Source: Stylophora pistillata (lineage: Eukaryota). From it: 64,000 bases of DNA. Where the stretch lies: positions 284,992-348,991 of the forward strand of contig NW_019217847.1 of NCBI RefSeq assembly GCF_002571385.2. The letters run 5' to 3'. Positions 34,356 to 51,900 of the stretch are shown here, one piece after another; within the stretch, counting starts at the first letter, position 1, and every line of letters begins with the position of its first letter. A program made the translations under genes and the position numbers. A model generated the notes under the pieces. That model did no database searches. It saw only the letters and a list, made by a program, of their open reading frames with translations, and was not told where the DNA came from.

Positions 34356-35128
34356 TCGGTCAAGTGAAAACCGACCGCGAAACCCTGGGAACGACTTACG
34401 CTTGAAGCTCTTCGACACAGCTGAAAGGTGAGCTGAAAGGAATACTCTAAAATTTTTAATAATATTATACTGATCAGCATTAATTTTTCTTTGGGAAAAT
34501 CACCTGAATAATTTGAACGAATAATCAATGATGTGTCGGTAGTTAAATCCAGTTAATAGTAGTGTACAACTTATGTATTCTTCTATTTATTGTCATGTGT
34601 TTCTGTTTCTGTATTTTTATCTCATACTGTCGTTTGTGCTTTATTGATTTAATATTTTATTTCTGTTTCTTGTATATTTATTGAATCTTTTGTAGAGCCG
34701 AATTTTATTTTAGATGTTTTAGCGTCCACACACTACCCGCCGAGACTAGCTCTGCTGTTTGTGGGTAGTGCGTCATTATGCTAAGTGTCATGTCATGTCT
34801 GATTACCATAAAATACAAATACAAAGTACTAGTAGTGTGGTGAAAATAACTACAGTGTTTTTGTCAAAAGGGTGAAAATGGGGAAGCAAGGAAATGAGTC
34901 AATTACGGTCGACCATGGTGCCTATTGTCTCAGGATATCAGAGGATTTCTGTTACTTTTCTTATCTCCTTATGAGCATACTTAGTGTGCAAAGCTATAGT
35001 ATAACTTTTCTAAGAATATCCTTACAGCCATTCCGCATCCATTTCTCTTTCCACCTCTCGCAACTTACTAACTAATAAGGCTTACACACTTTGTACATCT
35101 GTTTTCAGAACCTTTGGTAGTTCAGATT

Positions 35129-35842
35129 ATGGCTTCAACATCTGTTCCAAAACTTTACTCTGCATGGTTTTGCCCTTTTGCACAAAGAGCTTGGATTGCT
35201 TTGGTAGCAAAGGGTGTGGAGTTTGAGTACATAGAACAAGACCCTTACAACAAAACACCTGAATGGCTGGCCATCAATCCTCGAGGAATGGTGCCTGTGA
35301 TTGTTCATAAAAACAAAGCAATTTATGAAAGTTCAGTATGCATTGAGTATGTGGATGAGGCATGGTTAACTGAGTCAAGATTGCTTCCAGCAGATCCCTA
35401 CTACAGAGCTCATGCAAGAATTTGGGGAGATTTTATTGGCAAGAAAATTGTTCCTTCCTTTTATGCTCTTCTTATGAAACAGAATGAGTCCGAGCAAGAG
35501 AAAATTAAATCTCAGTTGATAAGTCACCTGCTTGAATTTGTGAAAGCCATGGACATTAAAGGGCCTTTCTTCCAAGGTGAGAAGTTGGGTTATGTTGACA
35601 TCATGTTAGCTCCACATGCAGCAAGGTTCTTTATTCTCAAGCATTATCGTTGCTTTGAAGTTCCAAAAAGTGAGAAGTTCAAAAGATTTCGTGTTTGGTG
35701 GGAAGCTGTAAGGAGTACTTCAGCTGTGAAGGCTACATTGCAAGATGAAAGCAAACTTTTAGATTCTTACCAACGATATGCAGATGCTAGTGCCACATCT
35801 CAAGTTGCTGATGCCATTAGACAGGGAAAGACAATGCCTTAA
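35129..35842 (+). CDS. Glutathione S-transferase, cysteine-type (omega-like, CPFA motif), 237 aa, intronless CDS
   Basis: SAWFCPFAQRAWI; INPRGMVPVI (cis-Pro); YESSVCIEYVDE; LLPADPYYRAHAR; GPFFQGEKLGYVD N-capping motif. Probable 5' UTR intron 34428-35108. Confidence 0.92.
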   Translation: MASTSVPKLYSAWFCPFAQRAWIALVAKGVEFEYIEQDPYNKTPEWLAINPRGMVPVIVHKNKAIYESSVCIEYVDEAWLTESRLLPADPYYRAHARIWGDFIGKKIVPSFYALLMKQNESEQEKIKSQLISHLLEFVKAMDIKGPFFQGEKLGYVDIMLAPHAARFFILKHYRCFEVPKSEKFKRFRVWWEAVRSTSAVKATLQDESKLLDSYQRYADASATSQVADAIRQGKTMP

Positions 35843-37430: not shown

Positions 37431-38141
37431 CTAGGGAATTGTTGAACCATTGCGAACAGCATCTGCAAGCTCAGACTTAGCATTACCCTCAGCATAAGGC
37501 CTAGCATTTGCCAAAACCTTATCTTTATTCTGTAGAACTGCTTTTACTGAAGGGTGATTTATCACTGCTTTTGCCCATACATGATATCTAATGTATTCTT
37601 CTGTCTGAGGAATTTGAAAGCCACGATAATGTTCCAGAATGTACATCCTTGAAGCCCAAGGAGCAAACATAATGTCAACATATCCAAGTTCCTTTCCTTG
37701 AAAAAAAGGGCCTGCCTGATCCATTGCCTGGGAAAATTCTAATATATTTGTTAGAAATATTTCTTTGTACTCATTTTGCTCTTCTTGAGACTGCTTAATA
37801 AGGAATCGGTAATATGGTGGGATAAGCTTCTTGATGATAAAATCTCCCCACATTCGTGCCTTAGCCCTCTGATAAGGATCCTTAGACAGTAGCCTTGGTG
37901 CATGAGGCCAGGCTTCATCAACATATTCAATGCAAATATGGCTCTCGTAGATTGACTCGCCATTATGCACGATACATGGTATTAATCCACGTGGGTTTAT
38001 AGCCAGCCACTCGGCAGACTTGTTGTAAGGATCCTGCTCTATGTAATCAAAATCAATTCCCTTCGCTAACATTGAGATCCATGCTCTGTGTGCAAATGGA
38101 CAGAACCAGGCACAGTATAGCTTCGGTTTGTTTTCTGTCAT
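37431..38141 (-). CDS. Glutathione S-transferase paralogue (omega-like, CPFA motif), 236 aa, intronless CDS
   Basis: CAWFCPFAHRAWI; INPRGLIPCI; YESHICIEYVDE; GPFFQGKELGYVD; colinear with the 35129-35842 protein. Probable 5' UTR intron 38643-38146. Confidence 0.92.
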   Translation of the reverse strand: MTENKPKLYCAWFCPFAHRAWISMLAKGIDFDYIEQDPYNKSAEWLAINPRGLIPCIVHNGESIYESHICIEYVDEAWPHAPRLLSKDPYQRAKARMWGDFIIKKLIPPYYRFLIKQSQEEQNEYKEIFLTNILEFSQAMDQAGPFFQGKELGYVDIMFAPWASRMYILEHYRGFQIPQTEEYIRYHVWAKAVINHPSVKAVLQNKDKVLANARPYAEGNAKSELADAVRNGSTIP

Positions 38142-38678
38142 TCTTCTAAAGGTTAAATTGTAATAAAGCAAGGCAATAACATTAAAATCAGATAAACAAT
38201 GGGGGTGCGAGTATAGGTACAGTCAGCAGATCGTTTCCGTCTACCATTACTCGTGTTCAATAATTCCGTTTTACTCTGTTTTTGAACTGAACCATCGAAG
38301 ATGAAACGCATGACCAAGGAGGGTGAGGTATAACTTGGTGTGAATCGTGGACTAAAACCAGCCCTTAGGGATCTTTCAAAGAGGTGTTACTACCGGACGA
38401 CAAAAAGAAAATTGGGCAAGATTTCCTTAGAACCCCGTATTATTACTTCATTATGCATTCAATTCTTGGATAAAGGAAAGCAGAGGCAAAACAACAGATT
38501 TCCTTTGGGACTATGGCTTTGTTTTTGATTGGTATGGGGTTCTACGGAGATCTTTCCGAAAATCGGCTTCCTCTCAAAGTAATAACACACTGCCCATTCT
38601 AGTTGCAGTCTACTTCATATCAAAGTAACTCACTCTCACTTACCGTGAAAGTTTTTTGGTCTTCAACTTGTCAATGTT

Positions 38679-39984
38679 AAGTCTCCCTTGCAGCCGTTTT
38701 TAGTCTCGTCACGCAACGCTTCTCCCCACAAACGGCTGCTCACATTCGAACAACATTCCTTTCCCTTTGTTGTTTTTGCACCAATGAGATCGCTGACATC
38801 GTTTCTTATGTGACCAATCAGAGCACAAGAGATTGTAATCACTATCGTTATTCCCGCGTTTTCAATTTCTGCTTTTCATCGTAGTTTCTTGCTGGAGGAA
38901 ACCCTGAAGAAGGTTTTGCAAAGTGATCGTTCTTTTATTTGTTCCACCTCAGTTGAGACAAAAGAAAAAATTTATGTTTTATCTATGTAGTAGTGACAAT
39001 CAAATAGGCTACACCATGGCACCCAATATCAATTTTATTGGTAATCTGAAGCACTCAGAAGTGTATACTGCGATGATAATGTCTTGTATTTAGACACAAT
39101 ATTTTTACAGGTGATCATGTGTAATATAACACAGACAGAATAAAATAACGATAACCAAAATAAGACCACAGTGTAATACTAATACTGACTAAACTATTTA
39201 CATTTTCTATTTACAATATTTACATTCTTATTGTCCTTTCCTTTATACTGCTTAATTTAAAACATACATGTAAAATAACATTTTGCTGCAGACTCGTTTT
39301 TATTGAAACACTTACCACTGCCTTACAACATGCGCTTCATCGACGGCAATGGCACAGAGTTTTTTGGCATGGAATACACAGAGTTCGTCAGCATAAATCT
39401 CCAGCGTTCGTTCCTTAACCACGCTTCAGGGGATCCGTAAACTAAGGAATATTCGCCGCTTTCGACACGAGTGCGTTTACCACCCTCAAGTGAACTTATG
39501 TTACCAGCTTTTAGCCCTAGCTCCCTCAAATGGGACACTTGGTCGTTCATAAGGCTTTCCCCAATGGTGAGAAAACGACGACGATATGACCAGGCTCTTG
39601 TGAGGTAAGATCAAACACGAGTGGTAGTGCTTCATACAGGAGAGATTTCCCGAAACCAGTAGGAAGATTGACAAATACATCCTTTCTTTCCTCAACTATT
39701 TTCCTAATTCCAGTTTTTTGCTGCGCATTTAAACTAGGAATTCGAAATGTATTACTAACAACATTAAACGCTTCTTCAAAGGACGCCATTTTCAAAGCTT
39801 TGAACTCGAAGATGAAACAAACAATATGATTGGTTAGACTACTTTGGCGCGTACAGTTCTCAACATATGTAACCCAAATAGTGATTGGTTGAAGTAGCGG
39901 AAAGGAATGTTGTTCGAATGTGAGCAGCCGTTTGTGGGGAGAAGCGTTGCGTGACGAGACTAAAAACGGCTGCGAGGGAGACTA
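38679..39984 (-). mobile_element. Internally deleted AcademH-like DNA transposon carrying a RecQ-like helicase fragment
   Basis: Near-perfect TIRs of about 85 bp (agtctcccttgcagccgtttttagtctcg... / ...cgagactaaaaacggctgcgagggagacta); 9-bp TSD gtcaatgtt/atcaatgtt. Frameshifted SF2 helicase remnant at 39790-39317 (LPTGFGKS, VVFSPL..MNDQV, YGSPE, AVDEAH). Confidence 0.8.
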
Positions 39985-40174
39985 ATCAATGTTCGACAGA
40001 AGCTGGATCCGAGATAAATTCCCAGAGTGCTTCGCAAGCCTATCATAAACATTGCGTTGCGTCATTATGCTTTGGAAAAAGTTTTTGATTAATACTGATT
40101 ACACAAGATTTAAAAAAGAGACACGCTTTCTTTCGTTTAGAGGGAAAACTTTTAGGTTCTGGTGGTATGGAAAC

Positions 40175-41176
40175 ATGTTTGAAGTATCAAAGCGCTTAGA
40201 ACAAGCCAACCAAGCGGCAAATCCACACGAACATTTGGAAGAGGAGCACGTGAGAGCTGGTCGCAACGCCGAACTTTCATTTGTGTCTGCTCTGCGTTTG
40301 AAGAGCGGGCTTGACAAATCAAATTTGTTTTGCTGTTTAAGGATTCCAGATAGATATCAAGCACGGAAACGAGAAATCGATGTAGTGGTTCTCACTACAG
40401 ATGGAATATTTTGCATCGAGGTGAAATATTGGTCGGGCACTATAACGAGAAGTGAAGACGGCTCAAAATGGATCCAAACGAGAACGAAGCAGATCGCGAC
40501 GAACTCCTTTGCTACCAACCACATTGAACACAACAATAGTGCTATCGAGACTGAACACAAGGCTCGTCTTCTGCGAGATTATTTAAGTAGAAAAGAGGTC
40601 TATGTTGCAGAGAATCTGTTACACAGTCGAGTCGTTTTCTGTAACGCAAACGCTGAGCTAGATGAACACATAGCAAACGATAGCGCTGTAATTAAACCGA
40701 GTGATGATCATGACAAATTCGTTAAAAGCTTTAGTCGAAGCTTCTTGCAAAGTTTGTCAGAATCAGTTGTTCCGTCCTGGATTTCAGGAAAACTGTCCTA
40801 TTCACAAATAAATCAGATCAGAAATGTTCTTTCCACGACAGGAACTTGGGATGTAATTCATTTGAACGGAGGAAGACAGCTGTGCGGGGATTTAAAAGAA
40901 TGTACGGGAGTTTCTCTCGATCGGAGGAAGTGTGAAGCGCTGGTGTTTTCGCATCAGAGAAGTCGCGTGTTGGGCATGGCATGGGCTTTGTTTGGCTACA
41001 GTCCACAAGTCTATATATCCTTGATAGAGCGGGGTGGAAGCGGATTATTATGGAACTCCTATTGTGCCACCTTGAAAATACCGCACAACGCTGATGTTGT
41101 TTTCCGATTTTGTGGAGATGAAGCAGATTCAAACATCCCAGCCAACGAGATTGAAAGAATATCTCTCAGCATCTGA
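40175..41176 (+). CDS. NERD-domain (PD-(D/E)xK nuclease-related) protein, 333 aa, intronless
   Basis: Uninterrupted 1002-nt ORF from ATG 40175 with GRNAE...LRIP...REIDVVVLTTDGIFCIEVKYWSG...W, the NERD signature. Unassigned C-terminal region starting near TWDVIHLNGG. Confidence 0.82.
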   Translation: MFEVSKRLEQANQAANPHEHLEEEHVRAGRNAELSFVSALRLKSGLDKSNLFCCLRIPDRYQARKREIDVVVLTTDGIFCIEVKYWSGTITRSEDGSKWIQTRTKQIATNSFATNHIEHNNSAIETEHKARLLRDYLSRKEVYVAENLLHSRVVFCNANAELDEHIANDSAVIKPSDDHDKFVKSFSRSFLQSLSESVVPSWISGKLSYSQINQIRNVLSTTGTWDVIHLNGGRQLCGDLKECTGVSLDRRKCEALVFSHQRSRVLGMAWALFGYSPQVYISLIERGGSGLLWNSYCATLKIPHNADVVFRFCGDEADSNIPANEIERISLSI

Positions 41177-41721
41177 CAGAAACGTTGAGAATATTTGCAG
41201 GAAATTTGGAATTAACTTCACAATGTCATTAGCGGGAAGCAAAATTAACGTGATTGCGCCTATGCGGTGTCATTATTAGCCTTCCTACTCATTGACACTT
41301 TTAGTAATTAAAAGAGTCCTTCCACAGCACAAAATAATCTAAGTGTGATTATCGACTTTCAAAGTATAAATCTGGTACTGTTGATAATCTGCACTTCCTT
41401 CTGAAGCAACAGGTGTCATCAGTGGCAATTTTGTGTGTGTGTGCGTGTGGAGATGTTTCTGAAAAATTAAGTCACCAGATGTAATAAGGGGTGCTTTCCA
41501 TTTGACCAAAATTTTCGAGATTTTGGGTCTGAAATTGAATGGAATGGGACAAGTTCTGCGATAAGTTTTCGAGAATTTAGGAACACGTTGTGAGTGTGCC
41601 CTCTTGAATGCGGTTGGACGCGTTCTATTCGAGGAGCTAAAGTTCCGATATTTGGCTGATCCCCGGTGTAAAAGCCACACCTGACGTCATGAGTCGCGCA
41701 CTATCAAACTTTAAATAAATA

Positions 41722-43900
41722 CTAGACGCATATCTGCGTGAACTCGGGCTTTCAATATCGCATATTTGGAGTTATCTTTAGGGGACTGCCATATTTCCAT
41801 CGTTACTGTCGTCACGAAATTTCATCATTGCCGGTCACGAATAAGTCTACTTGTGTTTATTTTTGTCTGCTGGAGTGTAATGAATGTTGTTATGGTACTA
41901 GACAACAATCAAAATAATATATTACCATATAGGAGTAAGTTCCTGTAGATGCCAAAGGTTGAAATTCAAGGACTTTTCAATGACTTTAAAGGCCAAGTTT
42001 TAGAAAATTGAAGGACCACTTTTGGAAAGGTTTGCATAAGCAATTTTAAAATCATTTAATATTATCTCTCAGGTTTTCCATGAAAGTACTGTAAGTTTCA
42101 ACTTGAAAACTGCTAAAGAAAAAGTATTGCAACAATCAAGCCTTAGTCCTCAAATTTAAGTACTTTCTAGGCCTTGAGTTTTTAATTTTTAAATTCAAGC
42201 ATCTTCAAGGACTTTCAAAGCTTTTACAAACCCTGAGTAGGTAATGTACTTGTCTTTAACTGCAAGGAGAAGGGAATTTTTTTATCTTTTATTGGTACCA
42301 AGTCAAAGTTTGTTGCCAAACGTTCACCCAAGGAGTTGTCAGGAATCAGTAGATTGAGGCAATATTACTGTTCAATAGCTCACATTGTTTTTAATAGAAA
42401 AATCTCTTAAATATTTAATACTGCTGATGGCCACAACAAGAGAAGCGGTGCTATTTACAGTTTTAGTGTGTTCAATTAAAGACATTCGACTTTCATTACC
42501 TACCAAGAGGGAATACACATATTTTGACCTTTTTGTGGGTTTCAAAGTAAATGTCATACAAAAATCTGAAAACCACATCAAAAACCCTGTGCATTCAACT
42601 ATTATTTCTTACAAGATTTTTGAGAATTGATTTTCTGTCAACTGAATCAGACAATATTCCTTCACTATAATCCCTTTCAAGATCTAAACTTCAGTTCGAC
42701 AAACATCAGTTTTTGGCAAATCATCTGACAGTAAATACTTGTTCGAAGATGAATTTCCATAATCTTTTGCCATACTGTATAACATTAGATAAGGTGTTTG
42801 AATTCCAATAACTACATGATTTTATTACGGAGTAGCAGAGCGAATAGACAGCCACAGCACAATTCACACTGAACTTTCTGGTTTCACAGGCATGACTGAA
42901 AATGGGCACTATGTTGAACTTTATCAATTTTAACCCCTTTCAACTCAAATATATCGTTGGGCATACTCTGAAAATAATGTACTACGCTATTTAAACAGTA
43001 TTTTGTTGGATATACCTAAAGCTAATACTGTTACGTTCCAGAATAGTTTCTACTCTAGCGCCTCAAGAACATTTAATACACATTCAGAATACACAAAGAT
43101 ATACATTAAACATTATATACATTTTGGTGGGTTTAGCGTCGAGTCGACGCAAAACCCACCAAATCGCTGAAATTCGCCACTTGGAGTCACAGAAACGACA
43201 ATACACAGCTAGTGAGGTAGGTTTACATTTATTTTGAGCTTTAACTCAGACATTTCATGATATAAGTTTACTAAAATAAGACTCTTCAATAATCTCCCAT
43301 ACATTCCTTTATATTTCGAATGAACAACCAGACTCGTCGCTTGTCTGGGCCCCTTGTGGAGGAATTCGGTAGGCTTGGACGAATACGCTCATAAACAAAT
43401 TCCTTCTCCCCTTTCTTATGAGACGTTTAAGAGCAGCTTCTTGTATTCTACTAGGTTCTCTATCACGTCTAAATACACGGTTGTGTTTACATGTAAACAT
43501 GATATGAGATAGCTCGTTTGATATAGCAGGTTTCGCTTGATATTTCTCGATAGAAGGTTCACTCGTAAATTGATCTCTCCTAAAGTTCGCAGACCGACCC
43601 GTTCCCAAAACGCTCCACAATTTTTAGTGTGGGTCTACTGATAACAATGTGTGACTTTCTATGTATACTGAGCGTAATTGCCATCGAATTTCTTTCGCGA
43701 ACATCAGTCCACGAAGGCAGCCATTGCTTTACTATGCGCTCTAGAGGGTTAGCACTTATTTCCATATTTCAGAATGACGTGACGTCATTCCCAATCTTCG
43801 TAACCTTCGGAAGCGTTCGTCGAACACTTCGGGTTCATTCAAAACATGGCAGTAAACCAGGGCAAAATACATTACCTTTTCTCAAAAATATAGGCGCTTG
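41722..43900 (-). mobile_element. Possible non-autonomous Helitron-like element (extent uncertain)
   Basis: Minus strand ends acgca-gata-tgcgt hairpin then CTAG|T at 41722. Decayed coding remnants at 42340-43000 (CAVAVYSLCYSVIKSCSYWNSNTLSNVIQYG); palindrome at 43123-43163. 5' end not located. Confidence 0.35.
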
Positions 43901-44689: not shown

Positions 44690-45460
44690 TTAATACCTTA
44701 ATAGCAGCTGGAAACTGAATTGCAAAGGTGTACAAATTATGTAAGAGAACTATAAAATAAAATCAAACCTAAAAGGGAACTAATTTACATATACAATTGT
44801 AATAAATGTTAGTTAAAATGTCTTGCGCTTGCTGGAATGAAAGTATCTCTGAACCAATTTGTTTTAAAGGAAACTCTAAATGGTCTGCGTCGTCGTAACT
44901 CCATAAGTTGATCTCGGTTATTGAAAGGCAGTAAGTGGTATAAACAATCCAAGGGATTGGAGACGGTGTTGTTAAAGAATTTTAAGCAAAGGTCTTCTCT
45001 CCGATCCCTTAGGGTTTTCAGCTCTCCCATCTGAAGTACTTCTCTATAATAATTACCATAACCGTATATAATTTTCAAGGCTCTCTTTTGGACATGCTCT
45101 AAACTTAAGCTCAAATAATTGGGGAGACTGTAATGGTAGACCTGACATCCATAAAGTAAGACAGATTGAATACAAGCAACATAAAAATTTGCTAATTCTG
45201 GTGATGGTACCTTAGCTCACTTTAACTGAGTTAAAAAGTAAAGGCGCTTAACGGCCTTTTTAATCGCCTCAGTAACGCGAGTGTTCCACTTGAGGTTGTC
45301 TTGAAAATACACACTCAGTAATTTCACGACACTAACGGCACTAACCTTAGAGCCATTAATTTCTATGAGATTGTAGGAAGGAGGGGAGCACACAAAGGAA
45401 ACTCTTAGCTCATTACAATTTTTTGGATGGAGTTGAAACAAGTTGAGTGTTGAGGAATAA
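44690..45460 (-). mobile_element. Decayed LINE (L2/CR1 group) 3' fragment
   Basis: VKLLSVYFQDNLKWN...KKAVKRLYFLTQLK; LEHVQKRALKII; LKTLRDRREDLCLKFF; FKTNWFRDTFIP. Confidence 0.8.
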
Positions 45461-45922
45461 AAGCGAAAAAAAAAATTATCTCCAAAGTCAGCTACTAATT
45501 TAATGTTGCCCACAAAAATCAACATTTGGATAAAGTGATTTGGCAGAGTTTGATATGTTTTGGAATGCACTTTCACTGGACAGAAGCAAAGTTTAGTAGT
45601 AATGAGCCACCTTTTGACGAACAGTTTGAGAAAATGAAGAACATTTCCAGTGGATTTAGAAATTGTCCTTAGGTGGCAATATGACAGCAATTAGCTTTGA
45701 TGAAAAGATGGTAGTTGTTTTCCACGCCAGTTATAGATGCTGAGTTTTCCTTATGATCCATGTGTAGTCGCTCCATTAAATGGAGGTCGCGTATGCAGAC
45801 ATTTTCCAGAGATATGAAGAACACATCAAAGCTAACTGACAGGAACTAGTAGCTAAAATAGAAAGTGAACTAAAGATCTATAAAACTTTCCAACAGATAT
45901 GTTAGTTCTTTCTAAATATGGA

Positions 45923-48900: not shown

Positions 48901-51900
48901 TCTTGATTGTAGCATTCTATCTGTTCAAATGTGAGGATCATACCTATGCTATCAAATATAGACAGCTGCTTAAGTACGAGTTTCTGTTTTAAGGTACCTG
49001 ACATAAAGTTAAAGTTAAAGTTAGTCATTTTTGATTCTGGTGGAATACTGATTTTCTTTGGCAATTAGGTAGCCATATCACACCCTGTTGCCTGTTCTTT
49101 TTGCATTTGATTAATAATGACACTCAATTGTTAACTTTACTACCTACACATCTTACATAGCAATTGAACCTGGACACATGATTTACCAAAAAGGTATAGT
49201 GTTCTTAACTGTTTTCAACACTCTCTTTTATTATCTGGTGAATGTTAGTGTAGATATCTCTGCCCATTTGCATGAATGACATGAGTGGATCGATCCACTT
49301 GAGAACCCTGGCTTGAACTGACTGATGTTCAACTGGTAATGTCATGGGAGGAACACCAACATTATTGTTGCTATCTTCAAATGGAGATGGCCCAGCTGGG
49401 TCAACACCACAGAACTCCAGATCATCAGGATCCACCTCCAATTGCCCATGTACCAAGGGGTTGTCTTCATTTAACATGCCATTGACCCACATCTGATATG
49501 GGGACCAATGGTTTGCTGTCCTTCCCTTGTGAAGATTGAAGGCCTCCCTATATTCGTGAACCCCAAGATTTACTCTTGGGAGTAATGTCAAATGTAGGGC
49601 AAATATATCCGTTGCATTATCAATGCTAAGCTGGCCTGATATCCTCCATTGCATAAAACACGTAATAGAAAAGATGACACACACATCTGAAGACGTCCCT
49701 CCAGAGTCTTTTAATTCTCTGATTTCTCGTGGAGGGACTGGCAATGAAACTCCCTCTACCTTCCCCTCTTGCTTCCACCTTGGCATCATAAACTATTACA
49801 TTTTTCACACCATAATCCACACGAATACGTGATGGCCACAACCCGTCTTTTTCAATTGCTTTCGGAAAGAGTTCCAGAACAGTTTGTGAAAGATTGTTAT
49901 TACTACATCTGAGAAACACAACTCTTCTAGGGAAACTGTGCATCCGTAGATTACAAAACCCCAGCGAATGAGAGAATGATGACCATCTAAATGCCGCAGA
50001 GAATTTGGCCATGGGACGAAGTATTGCCTACGAGAAACAACAATTCCCCACCTCAAGGCAGTATTCGCTGGATCGACCCTTGCTAAAAACTCACAAATTC
50101 TTCTTATTTGAATCCTCAGTCCAAGTGACTTAAGCCGGCTTGGTATGTTCATCCAGTTGTTAATCGGTGACGACCTGTTTTATCACTCCCAGGATATCCC
50201 ATTCTGAGAATTTTACATTTACGTCGAGAAATTGATGAAGGTTGTACTGCTAGAGTTTTGAGATAATTTTCAATAGCCCGTAGTACTTCTGCAAAAGCAG
50301 TACCTAGAGATTCCCACTCACAATCCGATCTTGCTCAATGTTAGTTAAGGCAATAGAACTCAAAAGACCAACGGTTCGATCGAGAACTACAGATTGTGCT
50401 TGCAAGTCATTGATATCTGTTTCATTTTTATGTATACAATGCTCTGTTCTTTTGAGCACTGAGGATAAAAATTGAGGTAAGTCTTTTTTCACATCAAATT
50501 CTGGCTCTAAGTCCGCCATGATGCTAGTTAAAACTTACCGCACAAAAAAAAAAAAGCCTGAAAGTTTCCGTATGCTAGTTATCATTTCCGGTCACTAAGC
50601 GGAAGCAATTTTGAATGTACTTTTTTTCATTGAATTGAACTTGAATTTTCATTGAATTGAACTTGAACTTCATTGAATTGAACTTGAAGTGTCATTGAAT
50701 TGAAATTGAAGTTTCATTGAATTGAAATTGAATTTCATTGAATTGAAATTGAATTGTAATTGAATTTCATTGAATTGAAATTGAATTCCATTGAATTGAA
50801 ATTGAATTTCATTGAATTTTAGTATTGAATATTGCTACAATTGGCTTGCCATAGCAGATCCCACTTACAGTTTACTGATCAACTAATTAGGTGCATGCTT
50901 AAGGTGGCTCCATAGAGTTTTAGCCTGATTATGATGTGCACCCCAGTGTTATGTTTTCATGGACAATTTTCTTTTTTCTGCTTTTAAGATCACTAAAAGG
51001 TACCAAGATGTAGCTCACAAAGGTCCACCTGTTTTTACTGTAGTTAACATAACACAACCGTTTTTATTCTTGAACTAAACCCCCATAAAGAAAGGTGCTT
51101 GATAGTGGTTAGTTGGCTTTGATTTGATTTTCTCCAGTTTGCTAAAGTGAATTCTTTCACAGTTTTCACCACATCTGAAATTTGTACTGATGATCATTTT
51201 AAATTAAGAAAAACAAATAGGGGTTACAAAGGACAATGCTCGCAAAATTTGTGCTCTGCCTCTTCTTTAGAATTGGTCCTGTAAATTTTTTTTTAATAAA
51301 TTGGCAATAAGGGCACAAATATGTTAAACATTCCAAAAGGAAAGACATTGAATCTCACTCAAAAGATCTCCCTTTTTACTCCCAAAACATTTCATTATAG
51401 AGTACAATTCTCAAAATTATAACTGTGTGTACTTCCAGTTTATACTACAGTCTGCCCTCCTGTTTCATTCTTTCTATATTTAAGCCACACAGCAAACTAG
51501 ATTTCTTTTTTTTTTTTTATTTTCCTCTCTTGTGCCCGCCTCAAATAACCCTAGCTACTTGCGGGCCCAAGCATTGTAATTTTTCATCTTAAGCTTAAAT
51601 AAAATTTTGTTGTTGTCGTTATTGTTGTTGCTTTGCCTAGATTGATACCTGCCACCTAAACTTGTTAAATCTATTGCCATTTTGCTATTTTTCCCCAGTA
51701 TTTTCCTTTCTTTCAACTTCTTTGAAGCATAGACGGCCGATGGATATTATGCCTATATTACTTTGTACTTGTAGAGTATTGCAGTAAAAAAGAAATGTGG
51801 TGTAAAATGCAGAGGGGTTATTGACAGCTTTTGACTAAGCCAAAATTGTGACCTAAGGAGGACTTGGTTAGAATAGGGTTTTGTACACTGGTCAATTGAC

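What the first reader, a model, noticed from the sequence alone, without database searches (positions are those of the whole stretch)
40175..41176. Intact, intronless NERD-family nuclease gene in an animal genome
Seen: a 333-aa single-exon ORF with all PD-(D/E)xK-type residues apparently intact (GRNAE, EIDVV, IEVK) and an unassigned C-terminal half. No transposon ends bracket it, and it lies between ordinary host genes. Established: NERD domains are mostly prokaryotic and poorly characterised, often fused to helicases or kinases. Inference: this is an ancient eukaryotic NERD family with patchy retention (the LRIPD and TWD motifs recall uncharacterised plant NERD proteins, from memory only) or a domesticated horizontal acquisition. 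It may be an undescribed nuclease in nucleic-acid defence or processing. It is the best candidate in the window for a novel protein system.
Basis: partly seen in the sequence, partly recalled or inferred. Interest (0 to 1): 0.75.

Follow-up and report, generated by a model that had tools for sequence, protein, structure and literature searches.

The report
Conserved coral NERD nuclease gene
A real, expressed, single-copy coral gene encodes a nuclease-type (NERD) protein whose uncharacterised family also occurs in starfish, fish, lampreys, early plants and some bacteria, so it is an old inherited gene and not a recent bacterial import.

Summary
The ORF is real. Its coding sequence most likely starts 108 bases upstream (40067-41176, 369 aa). 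It matches Pfam NERD well above the cut-off and keeps every catalytic residue (E33, E67, D69, E82, K84). It is single-copy in the 398-Mb genome. Poly(A) RNA-seq contigs from two studies cover it colinearly, without introns. Purifying selection is clear (dN/dS 0.13-0.15). The whole 330-aa architecture, NERD plus a conserved C-terminal domain with TWD/GG/GD motifs and no hit in Pfam, PDB sequences or the Atlas, recurs widely. It is found in other corals, Nematostella, Xenia, a starfish, sturgeon, teleosts and lampreys (named si:zfos-911d5.4), a lycophyte, Coleochaete, Picozoa, and Planctomycetota, Omnitrophota and Hydrogenedentota. A careful tree separates bacteria from eukaryotes (100/100) and nests the coral gene in an animal clade (100/99). 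That rules out recent transfer and a transposon-passenger origin. Vertebrate members have lost catalytic residues. Transposons do flank the gene: a TIR element ends 75 bp upstream. No paper describes the animal family. Function is inferred only: a metal-dependent endonuclease, substrate unknown, with RNA in the two assayed NERD enzymes. The scan earlier noted a different NERD-helicase gene elsewhere in this genome.

The parts
40020..40066 (+). Conserved 47-nt leader directly upstream of the start codon (5' UTR or core promoter)
   Evidence: 82-89% identical in 6 coral loci (L012, L014-L018), although synonymous sites are near saturation.
40067..41176 (+). Most likely complete coding sequence: 369 aa plus stop, single exon
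   Evidence: RNA contig X8 covers 40064-41522 in one piece.
40067..40174 (+). N-terminal 36-aa basic extension (9 K/R, 2 D/E, pI 10.7). Possibly an organelle-targeting presequence (inference only).
   Evidence: Homologous extensions of 19-62 aa occur in 19 of 38 cnidarian-type sequences. dN/dS is 0.31-0.52 against L012-L017. pI.
40259..40642 (+). NERD (PD-(D/E)xK-type) nuclease domain. Catalytic residues: E33 at 40271-40273, E67 and D69 at 40373-40381, E82 and K84 at 40418-40426 (333-aa numbering).
   Evidence: Pfam PF08378 at 64.9 bits. The residue pattern EEDEK is kept in 160 of 209 family sequences and in 30 of 31 cnidarian-type ones. dN/dS is 0.08-0.11.
40667..41173 (+). Linker plus conserved C-terminal domain of unknown fold, with motifs GTWD (from 40841), LNGG, GD and FRxCGD
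   Evidence: Aligns with bacterial, plant and animal relatives. No Pfam, PDB-sequence or Atlas match. Not a second NERD domain (hhalign probability 3.5%). dN/dS is 0.13-0.15.
41177..41522 (+). 3' untranslated region as far as RNA-library contigs run
   Evidence: Contigs of X8, X13 and X11 end at 41522, and X9 ends at 41475. Contig ends are not proven RNA ends.
37431..38171 (-). Glutathione S-transferase gene, head-to-head neighbour (context)
   Evidence: Pfam GST_N_2 at E 6.9e-17. A 77%-identical GST lies 154 bp from the NERD start, in divergent orientation, in coral locus L018.
38672..39991 (.). Inserted TIR transposon between the GST and NERD genes (context, not part of the gene)
   Evidence: 93-nt inverted arms, 96% complementary. 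Many copies at 95-100% identity elsewhere in the genome. RNA contigs break at 39984-39986.
41709..42991 (.). Second, unrelated dispersed repeat downstream (context)
   Evidence: At least 30 other places in the genome at 84-94% identity.

Best explanation
This is a genuine coral host gene, vertically inherited, single-copy, intronless and expressed. It belongs to an old two-domain family of about 330 aa: a NERD nuclease domain followed by a conserved C-terminal domain of unknown fold. The family is shared by animals, early-branching plants, protists and a few bacterial phyla. In corals all residues of the PD-(D/E)xK-type centre are kept (the helix glutamate of GRNAE, the Asp of EID, and ExK). 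The protein is therefore most likely an active, divalent-metal-dependent endonuclease. The C-terminal domain probably binds or selects the nucleic-acid substrate, or regulates cutting. Shown here: gene reality, family membership, catalytic-residue conservation, purifying selection, presence in RNA libraries, phylogenetic placement and single-copy status. Inferred: catalytic activity; substrate (RNA is somewhat favoured because the two NERD enzymes with experimental data act on RNA, but DNA is not excluded); the role of the C-terminal domain; and the idea that the basic N-terminal extension of stony corals is a mitochondrial presequence.
For: Gene and domain.

Copy number: only the gene itself is found, by protein, by DNA for 39991-41708 and by PF08378.

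Expression: 5 poly(A) RNA-seq runs in 2 studies hold 71-76% of the words. Contigs 40064-41522, 40103-41475 and 40195-41522 are colinear without joints.

Selection: dN/dS is 0.13-0.15 against four coral loci and 0.18-0.22 for five closer pairs. Of 8 variable sites in RNA contigs, 5 are synonymous.

Family breadth: 31 of 31 word-search hits carry PF08378 at 100% coverage. The profile search gave 890 hits at E<=1e-3, many of them full length. Bacterial loci L002-L011 match residues 1-326.

Tree: bacteria and eukaryotes split at 100/100, the animal clade has 100/99 and hexacorals 98/97.

Catalytic residues. The spacing matches ZwsA E535/D567/E580/K582, whose mutants lose activity, and ZwsA cleaves RNA in vitro (passages read). 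The TbLrRP2 NERD domain is needed for rRNA processing (passages read). One protist relative carries a CCCH zinc finger.
Against: No structure could be predicted, so the PD-(D/E)xK fold and the fold of the C-terminal domain rest on sequence alone. No activity, substrate or localisation data exist for any member of this subfamily (searches found no paper).

Vertebrate members and two unnamed animal-clade members have lost catalytic residues yet remain conserved. The family's core role may therefore not need catalysis.

RNA-library contigs cannot show strand, ends or level, and DNA carry-over is not formally excluded.

Oikopleura falls outside the animal clade on a long branch.

The presequence idea rests on composition only. 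No targeting predictor was available. The extension is missing in sea-anemone-type sequences, and its dN/dS reaches 0.69-1.05 against L018 and L019.
Confidence: 0.8

Rival explanations
1. The gene is an antiviral or anti-mobile-element immune nuclease, conserved from bacterial defence systems to animals.
For: NERD domains sit at the N-termini of the defence proteins PglW, MkoA and MAD6, which are the only PADLOC and NCBIfam matches. ZwsA is a NERD RNA endonuclease that acts against RNA phages.
Against: Those matches cover only the NERD part, at 30-33 bits against cut-offs of 460 and 990. The immediate neighbours of the bacterial full-length homologues are UvdE, a PIG-L deacetylase, a PAP2 phosphatase, an epimerase or proteins with no Pfam family, not defence genes. 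This covers 10 neighbours in 5 loci. The coral gene is single-copy with low dN/dS, not diversified as many immune genes are. No relative was found in viral contigs.
Confidence: 0.15
2. The protein is a non-catalytic nucleic-acid-binding or scaffold protein (a pseudo-nuclease) in corals too.
For: Sturgeon (FDDDK), teleost (LENDK) and lamprey (VDSDK) members, and the unnamed P0035 and P0040, lack the catalytic pattern yet keep the whole architecture. SmdA shows that a NERD-like domain can function without the most conserved residues.
Against: 30 of 31 cnidarian-type sequences, the starfish, Xenia, the plants, Picozoa and the bacteria all keep EEDEK. The NERD domain has the lowest dN/dS in the gene, 0.08-0.11.
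Confidence: 0.1
3. The gene is a recent horizontal acquisition from bacteria, or bacterial contamination of the assembly.
For: It is intronless. NERD is mostly prokaryotic in the literature. Bacterial homologues share the same length and architecture.
Against: It nests in an animal clade whose internal order follows the species tree (window coral with Desmophyllum, then Montipora, then Nematostella). Bacteria lie across a 100/100 branch. GC content (0.41) is like its surroundings. The gene lies on a contig extending to at least 349 kb (window coordinates), with host GST genes and coral repeats beside it. The GST neighbour is conserved in another coral. It is present in poly(A) libraries.
Confidence: 0.03
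4. The gene is a passenger or remnant of a transposon.
For: It is flanked by a TIR element 75 bp upstream and another repeat about 530 bp downstream. It is intronless.
Against: The two flanking repeats belong to different families. None of their other copies carries the gene, and 39991-41708 is unique in 398 Mb. There is one protein match and one PF08378 match in the genome. Orthologues in other corals have different flanks.
Confidence: 0.02

Closest known systems
Database proteins 'uncharacterized protein si:zfos-911d5.4' (ray-finned fishes, named after the zebrafish locus) and 'NERD domain-containing protein' of Nematostella, Patiria, Desmophyllum and Oikopleura
   Same: Same family. They show a full-length colinear match (profile positions 18-349), the same NERD plus C-terminal domain architecture and the same TWD/GG/GD motifs. 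The Atlas top cluster scores 0.96.
   Different: The fish and lamprey proteins have lost the catalytic pattern. Fish gene fragments end at what look like exon borders, suggesting introns there (inference). None has been studied: 0 papers hold 'zfos-911d5.4'.
ZwsA (Zowangsin), a Pseudomonas NERD RNA endonuclease against RNA phages (bioRxiv 10.64898/2026.04.06.716636; passages read)
   Same: NERD domain with the same E...D...ExK tetrad. The Asp-to-Glu spacing of 13 and the ExK are identical in pattern.
   Different: ZwsA has VHS, DUF647 and S4 domains, and none of these is found here. It has no counterpart of the C-terminal domain. It is bacterial and defence-linked.
TbLrRP2, the trypanosome NERD protein needed for LSU rRNA fragmentation (PMC12702573; abstract and passages read)
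   Same: A eukaryotic NERD protein whose conserved charged residues are required, and probably an RNA endonuclease.
   Different: TbLrRP2 has a C-terminal transmembrane domain and a DEDDh partner. Its authors found only bacterial relatives for it. The coral protein has no hydrophobic stretch of transmembrane strength (maximum 19-residue Kyte-Doolittle mean 1.15), and it belongs to a family with animal, plant and protist members.
NERD domains of BREX/Pgl PglW, MADS MAD6 and MkoA
   Same: Homologous NERD domain, with local matches at E 1e-5 to 1e-14.
   Different: Those are proteins of 600-1600 aa with kinase or other modules, set in multi-gene defence loci. Scores here are far below their cut-offs, and no kinase or helicase part is present.

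Membership tests
NERD (Pfam PF08378), PD-(D/E)xK superfamily | Match to the family profile above the curated cut-off | tested here: met
   64.9 bits against 22.1, profile positions 2-111 of 111. Also found in the six-frame genome search at 67.2 bits.
NERD (Pfam PF08378), PD-(D/E)xK superfamily | Conserved acidic and lysine residues of the active site (E in the first helix, D, ExK) | tested here: met
   E33, E67, D69, E82 and K84 are present. The same pattern occurs in 160 of 209 aligned family sequences.
NERD (Pfam PF08378), PD-(D/E)xK superfamily | Restriction-endonuclease-like alpha/beta fold | not testable with these tools
There is no PDB sequence relative at E<=1, and the Atlas holds no model.
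NERD (Pfam PF08378), PD-(D/E)xK superfamily | Metal-dependent nuclease activity | not testable with these tools
   Needs a biochemical assay.
Two-domain NERD plus C-terminal-domain family (si:zfos-911d5.4-like; bacterial 326-aa proteins) | Colinear full-length similarity, including the C-terminal TWD / GG / GD / F(R/H)xxG motifs | tested here: met
   T60, D62, G68, G74, D75 and F146 of the C-terminal alignment are invariant in 15 of 15 sequences, including 8 bacterial ones.
Two-domain NERD plus C-terminal-domain family (si:zfos-911d5.4-like; bacterial 326-aa proteins) | Placement inside the animal branch of the family tree | tested here: met
   Animal clade of 12 rows at 100/99 and hexacoral clade at 98/97.
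BREX PglW / MADS MAD6 / MkoA defence proteins | Whole-protein score above the family cut-off, with kinase or other effector modules | tested here: not met
   31.8 bits against 990 (PglW) and 32.8 against 460 (MAD6). Only the NERD part aligns.
ZwsA-type RNA-phage defence nuclease | VHS, DUF647 and S4 RNA-binding domains around the NERD domain | tested here: not met
   The Pfam scan lists only NERD above cut-off.
TbLrRP2-type membrane-anchored NERD RNase | Transmembrane domain | tested here: not met
   The highest 19-residue hydropathy mean is 1.15. This is a crude scale test, not a dedicated predictor.

The most novel reading that the evidence does not exclude
This is an undescribed, ancient two-domain nuclease family that was present early in eukaryote evolution and is shared with Planctomycetota-type bacteria. 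It survives in marine invertebrates, jawless and ray-finned fishes and early-diverging plants. In stony corals it acquired a basic presequence and works as an organellar (mitochondrial) RNA- or DNA-processing endonuclease. In vertebrates the same protein became a catalytically dead binding protein. The C-terminal TWD/GG/GD domain would be a new nucleic-acid-recognition module.
Probability: 0.2. Interest if true: 0.6.

Novelty: new member of a known kind. Interest (0 to 1): 0.42.

Why it matters
The papers read here describe NERD as essentially bacterial, with a few plant and archaeal examples (PMC12702573, PMC9040797 and PMC3424549, passages read). None of the 29 papers holding 'NERD domain' deals with an animal protein. 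This work shows a well-conserved animal, plant and protist subfamily with a second, unassigned domain, intact catalytic residues in invertebrates and decayed ones in vertebrates. That gives an experimentally tractable entry, through Nematostella, zebrafish or recombinant protein, to what a stand-alone NERD nuclease does in eukaryotes. It is not a new kind of system, and its function remains unknown.

Tried and rejected
The Atlas has no model of the protein.

C-terminal domain identity:
- The Pfam scan of the 163-aa and 169-aa pieces gave 0 families. Across the 15 members of A4, three unrelated families were each hit by 1 member, at E 0.024-0.11.
- The PDB profile search at E<=10 gave 0 hits.
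- The Atlas feature search restricted to named clusters without PF08378 gave no usable hit.
- hhalign against the NERD-domain alignment gave probability 3.5%, so the idea of a tandem duplicated nuclease domain was rejected.

Bacterial gene context as a clue to function: there is no conserved neighbourhood. UvdE is adjacent only in two Singulisphaera genomes, which are one genus and therefore not independent.

Viral origin: no relative was found in viral contigs.

Metagenome loci were used instead.

The sigma-70 and terminator scan does not apply to a eukaryotic gene and was not used.

Transcript ends could not be fixed. All runs laid were contigs, and repeats break them at 39984-39986 and near 41522.

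dN/dS: L015 and L016 were left out as near-duplicates of L013. For 7 of 11 comparisons with the window the synonymous sites were saturated, so no ratio is given.

Trees: the first quick tree had 47 rows. The careful tree had 42 rows, made up of the window, 12 named rows, 22 unnamed rows and 7 bacterial loci. It left out the long-branch rows P0055, P0068, P0156 and P0160, also P0082, L005 and L007, and all other hits. Rows were chosen by hand for full-length coverage.

Taxon names were looked up for only 30 clusters. Absence from mammals, insects or nematodes is therefore not shown.

Expression tables of coral or zebrafish studies may mention the gene there.

Full report
OBSERVATION. The window has an open frame at 40052-41176 on the + strand. 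From the ATG at 40175 it encodes 333 aa. In 100 shuffles of the window the longest open frame was 201 codons. Pfam NERD (PF08378) matches residues 29-156 at E 1.1e-17, with 64.9 bits against a cut-off of 22.1. The second half has no Pfam family.

TRUE START. In 9 of these 11 the extension is related to the window's and is basic. In the window an in-frame ATG at 40067 gives 369 aa. Coral loci L012-L019 all start with a homologous 33-38-aa extension. The 47 nt before 40067 are 82-89% identical in six coral loci. RNA-library contigs begin at 40064, 40081 and 40103, upstream of 40175. I therefore take 40067-41176 as the coding sequence. Use of the second Met as an alternative start is not excluded.

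A REAL, EXPRESSED, SINGLE-COPY HOST GENE.
- Copy number: the protein finds only itself in the 398-Mb assembly, and PF08378 finds only this locus. A DNA search with 38200-43000 shows that 39991-41708 matches only itself. These genome searches score only the best candidates. One search did not recover it and I did not test it.
- Expression: five poly(A) RNA-seq runs from two studies hold 71-76% of the sampled words. In the four runs laid, single contigs cover 40064-41522, 40103-41475 and 40195-41522. In the fourth run the coverage is 40081-40859 plus 40865-41522. All are colinear with the genome and none has a joint inside the gene. Contigs cannot give strand, ends or level.
- Polymorphism: of the 8 variable sites inside the coding sequence, 5 are synonymous.

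FLANKS. An element with 93-nt terminal inverted repeats (38672-38764 and 39899-39991, 96% complementary) lies between the upstream GST gene and the NERD gene. It has many copies at 95-100% identity elsewhere, and it holds short DEAD/RecQ-like frames. A second repeat family starts at about 41709, with at least 30 places at 84-94% identity. However, they belong to two families and none of their other copies carries the gene. Upstream there are two single-exon GST genes (35114-35842 on + and 37431-38171 on -). In coral locus L018 a GST 77% identical to the second one lies 154 bp from the NERD start in divergent orientation. The head-to-head pair therefore predates the transposon insertion. Loci L012, L015 and L016 show no GST within 2.4-3 kb upstream.

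SELECTION. Against four coral loci (L012, L013, L014, L017) dN/dS is 0.13-0.15 at dS of about 1. By region it is 0.08-0.11 for the NERD part, 0.13-0.15 for the C-terminal part and 0.31-0.52 for the extension. Five closer pairs among the loci give 0.18-0.22, and one near-identical pair (dS 0.012) gives 0.66. Seven more distant comparisons are saturated at synonymous sites. All 13 full-length loci have no internal stop.

THE FAMILY.
- The word search gave 31 proteins, all with PF08378 and 100% query coverage. Named members are Desmophyllum (81%), Montipora (68%) and Nematostella (53%).
- A profile search of 1.84 billion representatives gave 890 hits at E<=1e-3 and 31 at E<=1e-30. Many are matched end to end, at profile positions 18-349.
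- Names recovered for 30 clusters include starfish Patiria, octocoral Xenia, Oikopleura and three lamprey genera. They also include sturgeon, paddlefish, piranha relatives and a catfish (as 'si:zfos-911d5.4'), plus the lycophyte Diphasiastrum, Coleochaete and Picozoa.
- The Atlas independently put a chordate si:zfos-911d5.4 cluster first, at 0.96.
- Full-length bacterial relatives (residues 1-326) occur in Singulisphaera, Isosphaeraceae, another Planctomycetota MAG, Omnitrophota and Hydrogenedentota.
- No relative was found in viral contigs.

TREE. A careful maximum-likelihood tree of 42 hand-picked full-length rows splits bacteria from eukaryotes at 100/100. It also gives an animal clade of 12 rows at 100/99, made up of hexacorals, Xenia, Patiria, vertebrates and three unnamed rows. 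Inside it the order is the window coral with Desmophyllum (99/90), then Montipora (100/99), then Nematostella (98/97). Plants form their own clade at 98/93. Oikopleura sits outside the animal clade on the longest branch (1.67), so its place is unsure. The root is not inferred. This pattern fits vertical descent at least since the cnidarian-bilaterian ancestor. It rejects a coral-specific transfer from bacteria.

ACTIVE SITE. In an alignment of 209 family sequences of at least 250 aa, the five positions E33, E67, D69, E82 and K84 read EEDEK in 160. This holds for 30 of 31 cnidarian-type sequences, and for Patiria, Xenia, Oikopleura, Diphasiastrum, Coleochaete and Picozoa. Sturgeon and paddlefish read FDDDK, characiforms and the catfish LENDK, and lampreys VDSDK. 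Two unnamed animal-clade proteins read EENVR and VDDMR. So the vertebrate proteins are probably not active nucleases, although they keep the whole architecture.

C-TERMINAL DOMAIN. The last 150-170 residues align from corals to bacteria. L55, T60, D62, G68, G74, D75 and F146 of that alignment are invariant in 15 of 15 sequences. This region has no Pfam, PDB-sequence or named-Atlas counterpart, and it is not a diverged second NERD domain. Its sequence pattern suggests mostly beta strands after a helical linker. That is my reading of the alignment, not a prediction tool.

N-TERMINAL EXTENSION. In 19 of the 38 cnidarian-type sequences scanned, an extension of 19-62 aa was measured. It carries 4-16 K/R and only 0-5 D/E (9 K/R and 2 D/E in the window). 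In four further rows (P0001, P0016, L018, L019) the script's core-start pattern failed; three of them also begin with such an extension. The window's extension has pI 10.7, against 6.9 for the core. This is the composition expected of mitochondrial presequences (general knowledge). No predictor was available, and sea-anemone-type sequences lack the extension. Relatives in other eukaryotes have unrelated N-termini. I rate this idea at about one in three.

FUNCTION.
- PADLOC and NCBIfam match only the NERD modules of PglW, MkoA and MAD6, far below their cut-offs.
- The neighbours of the bacterial homologues are not defence genes. UvdE is adjacent in two Singulisphaera genomes only.
- NERD proteins with experimental data that I read about are these. 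ZwsA is an RNA endonuclease whose E535, D567, E580 and K582 are needed (bioRxiv 10.64898/2026.04.06.716636; abstract and passages). TbLrRP2 has a NERD domain needed for trypanosome rRNA processing (PMC12702573; abstract and passages). SmdA is a cell-division factor that lacks several conserved residues (PMC9040797; passages).
- One protist relative (P0171) adds a CCCH zinc finger.

I therefore propose a metal-dependent endonuclease with a substrate-selecting C-terminal domain. RNA is slightly favoured over DNA. All of this is inference.

NOVELTY. Three literature searches were run: 'zfos-911d5.4' (0 papers); 'NERD domain-containing', 'nuclease-related domain' or 'PF08378' (32 papers); and 'NERD domain' (29 papers). 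They gave no paper on an animal member, judged from listings and abstract starts only. The PD-(D/E)xK survey lists NERD as bacterial (PMC3424549; passage). The proteins are, however, already in public databases under automatic names. This is a new, uncharacterised member and subfamily of a known domain family, not a new kind of system.

LIMITS. There is therefore no fold test, no intron maps and no synteny for named genomes.

Noticed in passing
window 38672-39991: A 1320-bp element with 93-nt terminal inverted repeats. It has many copies at up to 100% identity elsewhere in the genome, so it was probably active recently. It carries short DEAD/RecQ-like open frames and is inserted between the GST and NERD genes, 75 bp from the NERD start.
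   Followed up: partly
window 41709-42991: A dispersed repeat with at least 30 other places in the genome at 84-94% identity. It starts about 530 bp after the NERD stop codon.
   Followed up: partly
window 35114-35842 (+) and 37431-38171 (-); L018:1323-2033: Two single-exon glutathione S-transferase genes. The second is head-to-head with the NERD gene, and the same arrangement (154 bp apart) occurs in another coral's contig.
   Followed up: partly
proteins P0033, P0034, P0036, P0039 and cluster members: Vertebrate members of the family (sturgeon, paddlefish, characiforms, catfish, lampreys) have replaced the catalytic Glu and Asp residues but keep the full architecture. They are likely pseudo-nucleases.
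   Followed up: partly
proteins P0038, P0042, P0043, P0044, P0066: Unnamed, probably protist, relatives carry an acidic stretch followed by W/Y-L/V-L/I-V/I at the N- or C-terminus. This resembles Atg8/LC3-interaction motifs (a resemblance recalled from memory, not tested).
   Followed up: no
protein P0171: A 539-aa relative has a CCCH zinc finger (PF18044, E 1.7e-7) in front of the NERD domain. This hints at RNA binding in one lineage.
   Followed up: no
L003:4963-5901 (-) and L005:4958-5905 (-): In two Singulisphaera genomes a UV-damage endonuclease gene (UvdE) lies directly upstream of the NERD homologue and is divergently oriented. The other bacterial loci examined do not show this.
   Followed up: partly
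L007:6001-6504: The second Isosphaeraceae copy of the bacterial homologue has an in-frame stop in its N-terminal half. It may be a pseudogene or a sequencing error.
   Followed up: no
window 49205-50152 (-) and 44809-45690 (-): Broken integrase-core (PF24764) frames and retrotransposon-like frames lie downstream of the gene. The downstream neighbourhood is therefore transposon debris, not host genes.
   Followed up: partly
proteins P0145, P0150, P0153, P0161, P0176: Short fish-type predicted proteins match only profile positions 219-296 and then run into unrelated sequence after 'PQV'. This would be expected of a single exon, suggesting that the vertebrate gene has introns whereas the cnidarian gene has none.
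   Followed up: no
My six-frame PF08378 search listed only the present locus, so that search is a lower bound.
   Followed up: no
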